From Oikopleura dioica (taxonomy: Eukaryota; Animalia; Chordata), in the NCBI GenBank assembly GCA_907165135.1, contig OU015566.1:7254001-7318000 (forward strand): DNA of 64,000 nt. The letters run 5' to 3'. Positions within the stretch are counted from its first letter, which is position 1; each line of letters begins with the position of its first letter. The translations under genes were made by a program, and so were the position numbers. A model generated the notes under the pieces. It was not told the origin of the DNA and searched no databases. It saw only the letters and a list, made by a program, of their open reading frames with translations. Shown here piece by piece: positions 21,483 through 29,878 of the stretch.

Positions 21483-23620
21483 TTTAAATTAAAGGGGCTT
21501 GACCTTCGGGCCGTCTCAGCCCCGTCTCTGGCAAATTTAAATTAAGGGGCTTGACGGCCCGAAGGGCCGTCTCAGCCCCGTCTCTGGCAAATTTAAATTA
21601 AGGGGCTTGACGGCCCGAAGGGCCGTCTCAGCCCCGTCTCTGGCAAATTTAAATTAAGGGGCTTGACGGCCCGAAGGGCCGTCTCAGCCCCGTCTCTGGC
21701 AAATTTAAATTAAGGGGCTTGACGGCCCGAAGGGCCGTCTCAGCCCCGTCTCTGGCAAATTTAAATTAAGGGGCTTGACGGCCCGAAGGGCCGTCTCAGC
21801 CCCGTCTCTGGCAAATTTAAATTAAAGGGCTTGACGGCCCGAAGGGCCGTCTCAGCCCCGTCTCTGGCAAATTTAAATTAAGGGGCTTGACGGCCCGAAG
21901 GGCCGTCTCAGCCCCGTCTCTGGCAAATTTAAATTAAGGGGCTTGACGGCCCGAAGGGCCGTCTCAGCCCCGTCTCTGGCAAATTTAAATTAAGGGGCTT
22001 GACGGCCCGAAGGGCCGTCTCAGCCCCGTCTCTGGCAAATTTAAATTAAGGGGCTTGACGGCCCGAAGGGCCGTCTCAGCCCCGTCTCTGGCAAATTTAA
22101 ATTAAGGGGCTTGACGGCCCGAAGGGCCGTCTCAGCCCCGTCTCTGGCAAATTTAAATTAAGGGGCTTGACGGCCCGAAGGGCCGTCTCAGCCCCGTCTC
22201 TGGCAAATTTAAATTAAGGGGCTTGACGGCCCGAAGGGCCGTCTCAGCCCCGTCTCTGGCAAATTTAAATTAAGGGGCTTGACGGCCCGAAGGGCCGTCT
22301 CAGCCCCGTCTCTGGCAAATTTAAATTAAGGGGCTTGACGGCCCGAAGGGCCGTCTCAGCCCCGTCTCTGGCAAATTTAAATTAAGGGGCTTGACGGCCC
22401 GAAGGGCCGTCTCAGCCCCGTCTCTGGCAAATTTAAATTAAGGGCTTGACGGCCCGAAGGGCCGTCTCAGCCCCGTCTCTGGCAAATTTAAATTAAGGGC
22501 TTGACGGCCCGAAGGGCCGTCTCAGCCCCGTCTCTGGCAAATTTAAATTAAGGGGCTTGACGGCCCGAAGGGCCGTCTCAGCCCCGTCTCTGGCAAATTT
22601 AAATTAAGGGGCTTGACGGCCCGAAGGGCCGTCTCAGCCCCGTCTCTGGCAAATTTAAATTAAGGGCTTGACGGCCCGAAGGGCCGTCTCAGCCCCGTCT
22701 CTGGCAAATTTAAATTAAGGGGCTTGACGGCCCGAAGGGCCGTCTCAGCCCCGTCTCTGGCAAATTTAAATTAAGGGCTTGACGGCCCGAAGGGCCGTCT
22801 CAGCCCCGTCTCTGGCAAATTTAAATTAAGGGCTTGACGGCCCGAAGGGCCGTCTCAGCCCCGTCTCTGGCAAATTTAAATTAAGGGGCTTGACGGCCCG
22901 AAGGGCCGTCTCAGCCCCGTCTCTGGCAAATTTAAATTAAGGGGCTTGACGGCCCGAAGGGCCGTCTCAGCCCCGTCTCTGGCAAATTTAAATTAAGGGG
23001 CTTGACGGCCCGAAGGGCCGTCTCAGCCCCGTCTCTGGCAAATTTAAATTAAGGGCTTGACGGCCCGAAGGGCCGTCTCAGCCCCGTCTCTGGCAAATTT
23101 AAATTAAGGGGCTTGACGGCCCGAAGGGCCGTCTCAGCCCCGTCTCTGGCAAATTTAAATTAAGGGGCTTGACGGCCCGAAGGGCCGTCTCAGCCCCGTC
23201 TCTGGCAAATTTAAATTAAGGGGCTTGACGGCCCGAAGGGCCGTCTCAGCCCCGTCTCTGGCAAATTTAAATTAAGGGGCTTGACGGCCCGAAGGGCCGT
23301 CTCAGCCCCGTCTCTGGCAAATTTAAATTAAGGGGCTTGACGGCCCGAAGGGCCGTCTCAGCCCCGTCTCTGGCAAATTTAAATTAAGGGGCTTGACGGC
23401 CCGAAGGGCCGTCTCAGCCCCGTCTCTGGCAAATTTAAATTAAGGGGCTTGACGGCCCGAAGGGCCGTCTCAGCCCCGTCTCTGGCAAATTTAAATTAAG
23501 GGCTTGACGGCCCGAAGGGCCGTCTCAGCCCCGTCTCTGGCAAATTTAAATTAAGGGGCTTGACGGCCCGAAGGGCCGTCTCAGCCCCGTCTCTGGCAAA
23601 TTTAAATTAAGGGGCTTGAC
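21483..23620. repeat. 56-bp tandem array (~38.5 copies), each unit with a GC-rich GAA-triloop hairpin
   Basis: Unit AAATTTAAATTAAGGGGCTTGACGGCCCGAAGGGCCGTCTCAGCCCCGTCTCTGGC; 37 full units from 21533 to 23597, 7 of them 55 bp (GGG for GGGG), plus a variant first unit and a partial last unit. Confidence 0.98.
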
Positions 23621-26767: not shown

Positions 26768-29700
26768 TTATTGAAACACTCTATACTTAGAGAAGTAAAT
26801 TTCATGTGCTTCAGTTAAGAGATATATCTCATCTGGGATCATTGTATTTTCATAATTTTCGTTCGCAAGCCATCTATTCTCTCCGTTCTCTGCATTTTCT
26901 CTATATCCGCCTGTAACTCGTTGGACTTCTCGCATCTTTTCTTTTAAAAAGGTTCTCAATATAAGCTAGCAAGGAATATCTAACGCTTCGATCAAATAAA
27001 ATGAAAATGCAAAGAAAATAAAGACCCCTCAACTTCAGTTACGTAGTAAGGTTTTGATCGAGGAATTCGCAAAACTACATCATCAAAGCTCCAGTCAGTA
27101 TTTTGAAGGACATATTCGTTGGTTTTAGTGTCAATATGGTCAAGTACCATTTGATGAAATCTAACTACCCCATCTTCAAGATACGCACCACAAACAGTCA
27201 ATGGTCGGGCATTGTCGAACTTTTCATGAAGGCTAACTTGTTTGAAATATAAGTTATTTTCATATATTTTACTTTCTATACAGTTTTTTCCTTTTTTGTG
27301 GACATATTCTCTATTTTAAGAGGTTTTTGTTGGACATAAAATTTAAGATAATGTTCCACTTTTATGGACATTTTTTTCCCTGAAGAGGCAAAAATAGTAT
27401 TTTTTTTACAAAATCAAGGCTTTTAAAAGAAATCAACAGCTCGTGTTATTAACTTCACTGAATAAAAAATACATAGAAGCAAGAGAAAGGCATCTTGAGG
27501 ATAAAATTTGCTATCTTTCCGTTTAAATTTTTGTAAAAAAAAATTTAACGTCTCGGTAAGAAATTTTTTCGGGGACTCTCGCCCACTTTTGTGGACATTT
27601 TTACAGAAAATTAGGACAATGAATACCAAAAAAAGAAAAAAAAACTGTTGTACCTGTGTAGGCCCTAAGGTGAAAATCTGTCATGTATTTATTCATGTAT
27701 CTTTTGATAATGTCCGATCCACTTTCGTTGAAATATGTTGGATAAACTAGCCGGGAAAGGATAACACCAATTTTTATTTCTTGATCATCTCGGTTCTTCT
27801 CGGGATCCTTCCTCGATGGATTCAAATTTAAACCGGCCAAACTTCTTGGATAGATGATCATAGTGAGGAGGTGAAATATTTCTTCAAAAGTTATGTCCCG
27901 GTTGTCGATTTCTTCGAGTGCTTTTTTTATCAGAGTCATTAGAAGAGGTTGCAATGAAATCATTTTTATTTAAAGTCTCTTCCAGTATAAGCTCAAATCA
28001 CTTTTTATAAAAATCTTATTATGTAATATAATTTATATCTTAAATTGCAATCTTTTCCGAAACAGCAATTGGAACGCAAAGATTTGTATCTTTTTGGTCG
28101 AGGACGCTGCAAGAAACATTGAAAAATGCTGTTCTTACAGTTTTTGTCAACCGTTCTTTTAGATTCGAATTGTCGATTGCTTTTGACATTTGAAAACTAT
28201 CGAGAGAATGCTTTGGAATCAACGAATCATCCCATCCAATAACTTGAGAGAATGCCTCGTTTTGTATGTTATCGATTGATGGAATTTCATCAGATCGCAA
28301 CCATTCTGCATTCGATTGCTTAAAATATAGGCAAGTCAACCCCGATACGTCTGTATAATACAGACCTTTAAAAATTTCGATACTTGTTCTCTATGCTCAT
28401 CAGAACCCAATGGATTGTAAAGCAGATACCAAGCAGTTTGCCAGTCGCAGAAGATAAAAACAAAAATGCTTCTATTAAAAAACCCATTTTTTGAAGAAAT
28501 TTGATCCATCTCGCAAAAGCCTGCAGAGCCAGCTCCTGAATTTTCTTTATAATAAACAAATCAAATGAAACTTACGGAGATTGTTAACGTCCTTGTATCT
28601 TGATCCATGCCGTGTGTATCCCATTTTACGATAACCAACTCTCCCTGTTTGTTCACAAAGAATACCAAAATCAATAATACGCGACTCATCACTTGAAAGC
28701 AGCACGTTTTCCGGCTATCAAATGATCATGCAAAAATAAACTATTAAACCATTTAAAGTTTTATTCGACAAGACCTTCCTTAACATCGCAGTGCCATATT
28801 CCTATTGAGGAAAGATACTCAAAACCTTTTTTTACACCAATCGCAATTCGTTTTCTCTTTGACATACCAAGATATTCTGGCTCATTTTTCGGGATCTTTA
28901 TTTTTTCTCGTAAATTTGAATTGCACAACTCCATTACTGTTATCCAACCAAGACAGTCGGACTCAAAATCGCAAGAATCAAATATTTCAAAATTCACAAA
29001 GTGTCTGATTATATTTGGATGATATGGAACCACTTCTCTTTGGAGCGCATTTTTCTCCGAAGAATATTGTGTGAATATTTGATAACCCGTTGGTCCTCCT
29101 TGCGTCAAAGTTCCACTTTTCGTTTTCGATATTTTATCAACTGCTTGATCGAAATCTAGATAAATTTTTATTTATCTTTAACTTCTCAATAAACGGGAAA
29201 GAAAGTCAATACTCAAAGCATTTTGTCCAAAAACCGACCACCAATCATTTTTAACGAAAACTTAGGCCAAACAAATAAATCTTTTCGCAGAAATTGAGGG
29301 CCAAAATCGCCATAATCGGTTTGACCGACCTTGTGTATTGAGAAGTTCATATCATTTTGTTACTTACTTTTGAGATAATGAGGTTCAAAATGCAAGTTTC
29401 GCTCAGTATTTTTAAATCGAAAGACATTTGGATCAAATGGATGGAATCTTATTGCTACTTCAAGATCCATAATTTTGTCTTTGACAATTACTCCTTCGCC
29501 TCCACTTGAAATAATTTGCTTCGCATAAGAGCTTTCTATAAAGAACTGCCCTCTCTCCGGTTTCAGCTCCGAACGATCAATTTCTCGCAGGTTATCAGAG
29601 TTTTGCAGAAGAAGTTTTTTCTGTAGTGGTGTTTGCTCGAATTTCCATTTAAAACCAGGCCCAAATAAAAAACCTTTATCATCTTTGAACAAGACACTTT

Positions 29701-29878
29701 TCCACCTTCCAAAGCTGTCTTTTGGAAAGTACATTCTTTCAACAGACAAGATAAGCCGGTCTGTGTCATTTCGACTTGTCTCTTTTTTTAATTTGCCAAT
29801 AAATCTCTTCAGCCATGAATTAACGTTGTCTTCACTCAGCTGAGGAGGATAATCTTGTGTAGGAGTGGCAAAAATCAT
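26768..29878 (-). CDS. Divergent protein kinase fused to a C-terminal papain-like (clan CA) cysteine-peptidase domain; possible +1 frameshift at 27922-27928
   Basis: Kinase: ISSGGEGVIV, VAIR, ITVMELC, HCDVK/PENVLL, IIDFG. Peptidase: VLDQKDTNLCVPIAV (Cys codon 28076-28078), FHQMVL (His 27154-27156), YVLQNT (Asn 27100-27102). ATG 29878 directly after an AG. Confidence 0.75.

What the first reader, a model, noticed from the sequence alone, without database searches (positions are those of the whole stretch)
26768..29878. Kinase-papain-like peptidase fusion with an altered kinase catalytic lysine
Seen: one spliced frame carries a kinase (SSGGEG loop, HCDVK/PENV, DFG) followed by DQKDTNLC, FHQMVL and YVLQNT. 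Established: papain-fold proteases use Gln19/Cys25 (6 apart, as here) and His159/Asn175 (16 apart; 18 here), and beta-3 Lys-to-Arg usually abolishes phosphotransfer; here VAIK reads VAIR (codon AGA). Inference: a pseudokinase-gated or kinase-regulated cysteine protease. I do not recognise this architecture from characterised animal proteins; it may be a lineage-specific signalling or defence switch.
Basis: partly seen in the sequence, partly recalled or inferred. Interest (0 to 1): 0.85.

Follow-up and report, generated by a model that had tools for sequence, protein, structure and literature searches.

The report
Interrupted kinase–papain-fold peptidase gene copy
This is one more, deeply diverged copy of a large unpublished Oikopleura dioica gene family that joins an odd protein kinase to a papain-type cysteine protease. 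In this copy, as assembled, the protease half is cut off from the reading frame just after its catalytic cysteine, and no transcripts were seen.

Summary
The locus is gene g1920 of the Okinawan Oikopleura dioica assembly (chr1).

A profile of nine full-length paralogues matches eight exons of the window in order, giving about 717 codons. It belongs to a family of at least 67 proteins, found only in O. dioica and marine metagenome fragments.

I tested both folds on paralogues. The N-terminal half is a protein-kinase fold. The C-terminal half is a very divergent papain-type (clan CA) fold that no Pfam model or solved-structure sequence matches.

The "altered lysine" is not special to this copy: Arg stands at that position in 44 of 44 family members, while the HxD, Asn and DFG residues and the peptidase Gln/Cys/His/Asn are nearly invariant.

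What is special here is a break. Two paralogues have one exon across the catalytic helix. This copy carries about 109 extra bases, with stops and a frame change, seven codons after the Cys. No G(T/A/C/G)-AG intron restores the frame.

Three RNA runs gave no reads on this copy. One environmental contig lacks the whole peptidase region.

The scan has already reported this family at least 11 times on other DNA of this genome. Verdict: the family is real and unstudied; this copy is probably defective, or possibly mis-assembled by one base.

The parts
29368..29878 (-). Exon 1: start codon, family-specific N-terminal region, glycine loop SSGGEG (29509-29492), third-strand VAIR (29458-29447, Arg = AGA)
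   Evidence: Family profile positions 22-177, i-E 3.7e-27. First ATG after an upstream stop. GT donor.
28779..29155 (-). Exon 2: kinase hinge and start of the catalytic loop (ends HCDVK). Carries a 21-residue insertion relative to paralogues.
   Evidence: Profile positions 187-276, i-E 8e-29. Pfam Pkinase match. Alignment A2.
28715..28778 (-). Intron 2, 64 nt, non-canonical GA-AG, splitting HCDVK|PENV
   Evidence: The same join is used in the annotated product P0001. GA-AG introns are frequent in O. dioica (PMC7072748).
28576..28714 (-). Exon 3: PENVLL, DFG (28672-28664), activation segment
   Evidence: Profile positions 278-322, i-E 5.7e-15.
28366..28535 (-). Exon 4: kinase C-lobe (AGSAGF ... 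CDWQTAWYLLY)
   Evidence: Profile positions 324-383. Flanked by GT-AG introns of 40 and 47 nt, as in P0001.
28058..28318 (-). Exon 5: linker and start of the peptidase domain, with Gln/Cys motif DQKDTNLC (28099-28076). If read on, it stops at 28042-28040 after ...CVPIAVSEKIAI.
   Evidence: Profile positions 409-461, i-E 4.9e-13..
27949..28057 (-). The break: about 109 extra bases inside what is a single exon in paralogues. It contains stop codons and needs a frame change. Its ends are GA..AA (or GT..TG for 28063-27952). The only G?-AG choice that continues exon 5's frame (GA-AG, 81 nt, 28057-27977) leads to a wrong frame and a stop after 30 codons.
   Evidence: No repeat copy of this segment elsewhere in the window.
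27654..27948 (-). Exon 6: rest of the catalytic helix and helical lobe, including the family's most conserved motif YPRSLAGLNLNP (27852-27817). An ATG lies just upstream at 27963.
   Evidence: Profile positions 458-544, i-E 2.3e-18..
27043..27275 (-). Exon 7: beta-sheet lobe with His (FHQMVL, 27159-27142) and Asn (YVLQNT, 27114-27097)
   Evidence: Profile positions 548-636, i-E 1.7e-17. GT-AG introns on both sides.
26768..26935 (-). Exon 8: C-terminal strands and stop codon
   Evidence: Profile positions 637-685, i-E 8e-4. Acceptor AG at 26936.
26941..28414 (-). 1,474 bases missing from one 279-nt environmental contig (run X1, 99% alike). Their loss removes the end of exon 4 and all of exons 5-7 and leads to a stop after 13 codons.
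   Evidence: tables 5 and 8..

Best explanation
The locus is a deeply diverged paralogue (gene g1920, chr1 of the Okinawan O. dioica assembly). It belongs to an Oikopleura-restricted family whose roughly 700-residue proteins have three parts: a family-specific N-terminal region, an atypical protein-kinase domain and a very divergent papain-fold cysteine-peptidase domain. The kinase domain has Arg in place of the third-strand Lys and keeps HxD, Asn and DFG. The peptidase domain has the order Gln, Cys, His, Asn.

This copy keeps every catalytic residue of both domains. As assembled, however, it is interrupted seven codons after the catalytic Cys by about 109 extra bases that cannot be removed in frame by any G(T/A/C/G)-AG intron. 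The predicted product is therefore a kinase-like protein of about 491 residues that ends inside the peptidase's catalytic helix, so the peptidase half is not made.

I read it as a recently disabled (or silent and dispensable) family member, not a working kinase-gated protease.

Shown: family membership, both folds (on paralogues), conservation of the residues, the break, and the absence of reads. Inferred: that the break is real in the animal and disabling.
For: - Identity of the locus: one search gives the record and assembly for the protein look-up. L001 is 100% identical to window 33470-23233. One search gives the gene name.
- Family: 46 representatives and 67 proteins, all O. dioica or ENA/JGI metagenome entries.
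- Family membership: collinear profile hits on eight exons and a model of 486 + 231 codons, within the family's 690-720 range.
- Kinase: P0001 scores 48 bits on Pfam Pkinase. The family profile matches the hinge-to-DFG stretch (profile positions about 99-199) of solved kinases at E 3e-10. The paralogue model returns only kinases, E 6e-7.
- Peptidase fold: the paralogue model has pLDDT 65. In the wide search roughly 35-40 of the 50 rows are clan CA cysteine peptidases or related papain-fold proteins, best Z 7.7. The nearest ESM Atlas clusters are Peptidase_C39_2. In the model, the Cys sits just before a helix, the His lies in a strand and the Asn follows the next strand.
- Conservation: Arg 44/44, Asp 70/71, Lys 71/71, Asn 69/69, DFG Asp 65/65, Gln 52/54, Cys 51/53, His 36/36, Asn 34/36.
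- The break: paralogues P0057 and P0066 have a single exon there. No frame-keeping AG acceptor exists. The GA-AG 81-nt option ends in a stop.
- The genome's own annotation gives up before the Cys: P0001 is 327 aa.
- Expression: zero reads on the exons in three oligo-dT RNA runs of 1.5-1.8 thousand million letters each. The only reads laid are partial matches to the conserved YPRSLAGLNLNP stretch, so they come from paralogues.
- A 99%-identical environmental contig lacks the peptidase region.
Against: - Apart from this one junction, all 717 codons are open and every catalytic residue is kept. This is unexpected for an old pseudogene.
- A change of a single base in the 28 bases before 27948, which include a run of A, together with the 81-nt GA-AG intron, would give one frame with a 9-residue insert. 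A residual error of the Nanopore-based assembly, or a polymorphism, cannot be excluded.
- An unconventional acceptor (GT..TG, 112 nt) is also conceivable.
- Absence of reads in three runs of unknown stage is weak evidence of silence.
- The fold evidence comes from paralogue models of moderate confidence. Z 7.7 is within the range that unrelated models can reach. I could not measure the catalytic geometry.
Confidence: 0.5

Rival explanations
1. The gene is intact and makes the full kinase-peptidase fusion. The extra segment would be a lineage-specific intron, in one of two forms. Either it is an 81-nt GA-AG intron plus a 9-residue insert, with the assembly or this haplotype off by one base. Or it is a 109-112-nt intron with an unconventional or recently mutated acceptor.
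For: - All other exons are open and all catalytic residues of both domains are kept.
- GA-AG introns are common in this species (PMC7072748), and one is used at HCDVK|PENV in this very gene.
- The frame offset is exactly one base.
- The assembly is Nanopore-based with short-read polishing (PMC8008620).
Against: - No AG acceptor keeps the frame in the sequence as given.
- Paralogues have no intron at this site.
- A 9-residue insert in the catalytic helix of a papain fold would be unusual.
- The annotators' pipeline did not find such a model.
- No RNA support.
Confidence: 0.3
2. The locus has split into two products. One is a kinase-like protein ending at the stop at 28042-28040. The other is a separate downstream product starting at the ATG at 27963 (exons 6-8, about 236 residues). 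It could be a second cistron, as in Oikopleura operons, and would carry the His and Asn but no Cys.
For: - An ATG at 27963 opens the conserved frame directly after a stop.
- AG dinucleotides that could accept a trans-spliced leader lie just upstream, at 27978-27977, and an AATAA lies after the first stop (sequence).
- That operons and trans-splicing are established in O. dioica is my own knowledge.
Against: - Splitting a papain fold between the Cys helix and the His lobe leaves neither part able to cleave.
- No reads support either product.
- No family member starts at this point.
Confidence: 0.07
3. The peptidase exons are optional. The natural product would be a kinase-only isoform or allele, as in the environmental contig that joins 28415 to 26940.
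For: One 279-nt contig of a marine metatranscriptome, 99% alike on both sides, skips 1,474 bases.
Against: - The joint has TC..AG ends and lies inside exon 4 and 5 bases before exon 8.
- The contig also carries intron 3 sequence, so it looks like DNA or unspliced RNA of a deletion allele.
- The join shifts the frame and stops after 13 codons, truncating the kinase C-lobe.
- Depth is only 2, from a single contig.
Confidence: 0.08

Closest known systems
Unnamed O. dioica kinase-papain-fold peptidase family (for example P0057, P0054, P0047; UniProt label 'Protein kinase domain-containing protein')
   Same: Collinear over the whole length: same N-terminal region, same kinase with Arg in the third strand, same NLCVPI / YPRS.AGLNLNP / FHQM / LQN motifs, similar length.
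   Different: - Only 35-55% identical to any paralogue.
- Keeps 73% of the family's most conserved positions, the second lowest value.
- Carries a 21-residue insert in the kinase N-lobe.
- Has the 109-base interruption after the Cys.
Clan CA cysteine peptidases: papain family C1 (Der p 1, cathepsin B, xylellain) and C39 bacteriocin-processing peptidases (PCAT1, ComA)
   Same: - Order Gln, Cys, His, Asn, with Gln 6 residues before Cys.
- Cys at the start of a helix, and His and Asn on neighbouring strands of a beta lobe.
- These families fill the structural hit lists.
   Different: - No sequence-level match to any Pfam peptidase model or any solved chain.
- Structural scores are modest (Z up to 7.7, TM 0.40-0.45).
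C39 enzymes use Asp where this family has Asn (from my own knowledge).
- No pro-region or signal peptide is evident in this copy.
- It is fused behind a kinase.
KSR1/KSR2 pseudokinases
   Same: The third-strand Lys is replaced by Arg while the catalytic Asp, Asn and DFG Asp are kept. KSR2 still binds ATP (PMC4718504).
   Different: - No specific sequence relationship: the best solved-structure matches are TTK, PknG, CDK9 and DAPK1.
- No classical alpha-C helix is predicted in the paralogue model.
- The partner domain is different.
Plant tandem-kinase and kinase-fusion resistance proteins
   Same: A kinase or pseudokinase domain fused to a second module, in fast-evolving multigene families (titles and abstracts listed).
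   Different: A different kingdom, no peptidase partner and no homology shown. This is an analogy only.

Membership tests
Eukaryotic protein kinase superfamily (Pfam PF00069) | Significant match to the Pkinase profile | tested here: met
   P0001, the annotated product of this locus, scores 48.0 bits against a cut-off of 31.7, E 1.4e-12. Only the hinge-to-DFG part aligns.
Eukaryotic protein kinase superfamily (Pfam PF00069) | Bilobal kinase fold | tested here: met
   Tested on the paralogue P0057:100-396, not on this copy. The model has pLDDT 74. All Foldseek PDB hits are kinases, E from 6e-7, probability 1.00, TM about 0.4.
Eukaryotic protein kinase superfamily (Pfam PF00069) | Invariant Lys in strand beta-3 (VAIK) | tested here: not met
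   Arg (codon AGA, 29449-29447), and Arg in 44 of 44 family members. It lies in the third predicted strand. I could not obtain residue-level equivalence to a solved kinase.
Eukaryotic protein kinase superfamily (Pfam PF00069) | Catalytic loop HxD..K..N and the DFG motif | tested here: met
   HCDVKPEN and DFG are present. Family counts are D 70/71, K 71/71, N 69/69 and DFG D 65/65.
Clan CA (papain-fold) cysteine peptidases | Papain-type fold: Cys at the N-terminus of a helix in one lobe, His and Asn on strands of a beta lobe | tested here: met
   Tested on the paralogue P0057:397-667 (pLDDT 65; the beta lobe reaches 80-90). Roughly 35-40 of the 50 VIA rows are clan CA cysteine peptidases or related papain-fold proteins, best Z 7.7. 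Atlas neighbours are Peptidase_C39_2. Foldseek is weak, E 0.016. I could not measure distances between the catalytic residues.
Clan CA (papain-fold) cysteine peptidases | Catalytic residues in the order Gln, Cys, His, Asn/Asp, and conserved among relatives | tested here: met
   Present in this copy. Family counts are Gln 52/54, Cys 51/53, His 36/36 and Asn 34/36.
Clan CA (papain-fold) cysteine peptidases | Sequence membership of a described peptidase family (Pfam C1, C39 and others) | tested here: not met
   No Pfam family for exons 5-7 or for the paralogue domain. The family profile finds no PDB sequence even at E 10.
Clan CA (papain-fold) cysteine peptidases | Peptide-bond cleavage | not testable with these tools
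   Needs expression and an activity assay.
O. dioica kinase-peptidase family (unnamed) | Collinear match to the full-length family profile | tested here: met
   Eight exons cover profile positions 22-685 of 688.
O. dioica kinase-peptidase family (unnamed) | One uninterrupted reading frame through both domains | tested here: not met
   The break at 28057-27949 cannot be bridged by a frame-keeping intron with an AG acceptor.
O. dioica kinase-peptidase family (unnamed) | Transcribed | tested here: inconclusive
   No reads in three RNA runs that were about 56-59% read. Partial reads come from paralogues only.

The most novel reading that the evidence does not exclude
The family is an undescribed, lineage-specific single-chain signalling or defence device of larvaceans, in which an ATP-binding, Arg-type kinase module controls (or is released by) a papain-fold protease. 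On this reading, this copy is a working, highly diverged member whose catalytic helix is reached through a newly gained GA-AG intron, and the apparent frameshift is a one-base assembly or haplotype difference.
Probability: 0.12. Interest if true: 0.7.

Novelty: new variant of a known kind. Interest (0 to 1): 0.38.

Why it matters
A kinase fold fused to a papain-fold protease, expanded to dozens of copies in one tiny animal genome and with the catalytic residues of both halves under clear constraint, is not in the literature I could search. It could be a new regulatory or immune-type module in a chordate that has lost many standard pathways.

This locus adds three things:
- It is an early-branching family member.
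- It supports the view that Arg at the kinase's Lys position is ancestral to the family.
- It is an example of how copies decay or are mis-modelled.

It is not the copy to use for experiments. Intact, expressed paralogues are better.

Tried and rejected
- **Pfam on single exons:** only weak Pkinase matches and nothing for the peptidase exons.
- **tblastn of the exons against the window:** no paralogue in these 64 kb.
- **ESM Atlas feature search with exon 7:** only chance-level rows.
- **Word-based protein search with exon 6:** blank, as expected from the tool's length limit.
- **My first attempt to bridge exons 4 and 5 with a 41-nt intron:** replaced by the 47-nt GT-AG intron used in P0001.
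- **Listing of frame-keeping introns across the break that have an AG acceptor or a GT donor:** none has an AG acceptor. I checked AT-AC and GC-AG options by hand. The only in-frame GC-AG choice would delete the Cys itself.
- **Looking for the locus in other assemblies by exact ORF products:** not on record.
- **Searching for an orthologue with P0001:** only one 38%-identical hit.
- **Looking for the 109-base segment as a repeat, in the window and in earlier notes:** nothing found.
- **Family profile against PDB sequences for the peptidase domain:** no hit.
- **Not possible with these tools:** I could not fold this copy's own peptidase domain, because its exons have no single reference and I did not type long sequences.
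Full report
**What is there.** The feature lies on the minus strand. A protein look-up returned the annotated product of this very DNA. L001, from GCA_907165135.1 record OU015566.1, is 100% identical to window 33470-23233. The product P0001 is named Oidioi.mRNA.OKI2018_I69.chr1.g1920.t1 of Oikopleura dioica. That assembly is Nanopore-based with short-read polishing. It has a median intron of 49 bp, and 11% of its introns are non-GT/AG (PMC8008620).

**Gene model.** I built a profile from nine full-length paralogues (690-720 aa) and searched the stop-free stretches of the region. Eight stretches match in order:

| Exon | Window coordinates | Family profile positions |
|---|---|---|
| 1 | 29878-29368 | 22-177 |
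| 2 | 29155-28779 | 187-276 |
| 3 | 28714-28576 | 278-322 |
| 4 | 28535-28366 | 324-383 |
| 5 | 28318-28058 | 409-461 |
| 6 | 27948-27654 | 458-544 |
| 7 | 27275-27043 | 548-636 |
| 8 | 26935-26768 | 637-685 |

 Introns 1, 3, 4, 6 and 7 are GT-AG, of 212, 40, 47, 378 and 107 nt. Intron 2, which splits HCDVK|PENV, is GA-AG and 64 nt long. GA-AG is common in this species (PMC7072748), and the same join is used in P0001. The parts add up to 486 + 231 codons, within the family's usual length.

**The break.** In paralogues P0057 and P0066, the stretch from the linker to the middle of the peptidase domain is a single exon. Here, about 109 bases (28057-27949) lie between ...NLCVPIAVS and PLLMTLIKK.... 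They hold stop codons, and the conserved sequence continues in another frame.

- I listed the frame-keeping removals that have an AG acceptor or a GT donor. None has an AG acceptor. The candidates have ends GT..TG (112 nt) or GA..AA (109 nt).
- The only G?-AG intron that continues exon 5's frame (GA-AG, 81 nt, 28057-27977) runs into a wrong frame and stops after 30 codons.
- Read straight on, exon 5 stops 12 codons after the Cys.
- The official annotation also fails here. P0001 (327 aa) starts at an internal Met, leaves the conserved frame before the Cys and ends in an 11-base micro-exon.
- A single-base difference in the 28 bases before 27948, which include a run of A, would put the 81-nt intron option in frame with a 9-residue insert. 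I therefore cannot tell a real frameshift from a residual assembly error or a haplotype difference. My one read-laying run was already used.

**RNA evidence.** Three oligo-dT RNA runs labelled with this species, each about 56-59% read, gave no read on any exon. The few reads laid are 35-base partial matches at 27818-27852, with unlike flanks. That stretch encodes YPRSLAGLNLNP, the family's most conserved motif. So these reads show that paralogues are expressed, not this copy.

One 279-nt contig from a marine metatranscriptome (99% alike) joins 28415 to 26940.

- It carries intron 3 sequence.
- The joint lies inside exon 4 and has TC..AG ends.
- The join shifts the frame to a stop after 13 codons.

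I read it as a deletion allele, or unspliced RNA of one, and not as an isoform. It is a single contig at depth 2.

**The family.**
- An exhaustive profile-free search with exon 2 found 46 representatives.
- A second search with P0043 found 67 proteins. All are O. dioica or unnamed ENA/JGI metagenome entries, and many are fragments or mis-joined models.
- Pfam recognises only the kinase core and nothing in the C-terminal 270 residues.
- A family profile of the C-terminal domain finds no solved-structure sequence even at E 10.
- Full-text searches found no paper on such a fusion in Oikopleura.
- Earlier notes of this scan describe the same family at 11 or more other places of this genome. I used them as a lead and re-tested the claims.

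**Fold tests (on paralogues).** This copy's peptidase exons cannot be given as one reference, so I tested the folds on paralogues.

- *Peptidase domain, P0057:397-667 with 31 sequences.* The model has pLDDT 65, with the beta lobe at 80-90.
  - In the wide structural search, roughly 35-40 of the 50 rows are clan CA cysteine peptidases or related papain-fold proteins: Der p 1, xylellain, cathepsins B/X/H/C, staphopains, C39 domains, UfSP, Atg4, calpain and streptopain. The best score is Z 7.7 over 147 residues.
  - Foldseek is weak but points the same way.
  - The nearest ESM Atlas clusters are Peptidase_C39_2.
  - In the model, the Cys precedes a helix, the His lies in a strand and the Asn follows the next strand.
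  - The scores are modest, and the tool's own note says Z under 8 can arise from unrelated models. The weight lies in the uniformity of the hits and the matching residue order.
- *Kinase domain, P0057:100-396.* The model has pLDDT 74 and returns only kinases. The conserved Arg lies in the third strand. No classical alpha-C helix is predicted, and the usual Glu partner is not conserved.

**Catalytic residues across the family.**

| Residue | Family members with it |
|---|---|
| Third-strand Arg | 44/44 |
| HxD Asp | 70/71 |
| Catalytic-loop Lys | 71/71 |
| Catalytic-loop Asn | 69/69 |
| DFG Asp | 65/65 |
| Peptidase Gln | 52/54 |
| Peptidase Cys | 51/53 |
| Peptidase His | 36/36 |
| Peptidase Asn | 34/36 |

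This copy keeps all of them. With the rest of the active site conserved, it argues for a working but atypical nucleotide-binding module and not for a dead one. KSR2, with the same substitution, binds ATP and is reported to phosphorylate MEK1 (PMC4718504).

**How diverged this copy is.** It is 35-55% identical to any paralogue. It keeps 73% of the family's positions that are at least 90% conserved, the second lowest value. Many of the changes are conservative.

**Mechanism.** For the family, I infer a single chain in which a nucleotide-binding kinase-like module and a cysteine peptidase act together. The evidence is that both active sites are under constraint. Which controls which, and what the substrates are, is unknown. 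The large copy number, the tandem copies, the frequent broken copies and the fast divergence suggest a conflict-type role such as immunity, but that is inference only.

For this locus, the best-supported reading is a copy whose peptidase half is no longer made. The main rival is an intact gene hidden by a one-base error or by an unusual splice site.

**Verdict.** The family is worth study. This copy adds little beyond being an early-branching and probably defective member.

Noticed in passing
window 27276-27653 (intron 6, minus strand): The 378-nt intron is bounded by 18-nt inverted repeats (27280-27297 and 27631-27648, 83% complementary). It holds two 20-nt direct repeats, CCACTTTT(A/G)TGGACATTTTT (27356-27375 and 27583-27602). 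It looks like a small inverted-repeat transposon sitting in, or forming most of, the intron. The equivalent intron is 40 nt in P0057 and 402 nt in P0066.
   Followed up: partly
window 26941-28414: An environmental metatranscriptome contig (run X1) lacks exactly these 1,474 bases. The joint has no microhomology and TC..AG ends. It is possibly a deletion allele in wild populations.
   Followed up: partly
window 21483-23620: A long tandem array with a period of about 56 bases showed up as dozens of staggered self-hits when L001 was compared with the window.
   Followed up: no
window 27825: All partial reads over the conserved YPRSLAGLNLNP stretch carry G where the window has A. They continue into unlike flanks on both sides, so they come from at least one expressed paralogue.
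   Followed up: partly
P0002, P0072, P0016 (other O. dioica loci): Several public gene models of the family look mis-joined. P0002 runs from the kinase into a fucosyltransferase domain (PF00852). P0072 holds two kinase cores. P0016 has Ser in place of the catalytic Cys and a scrambled C-terminus.
   Followed up: no
window 33470-23233 (L001): The annotated neighbours of g1920 are a galactosyltransferase (PF01762), a gene with a faint NANM hit, an 88-residue ORF without a family, and an XK-related protein (PF09815). None is a family member, so this copy is not in a tandem cluster.
   Followed up: no
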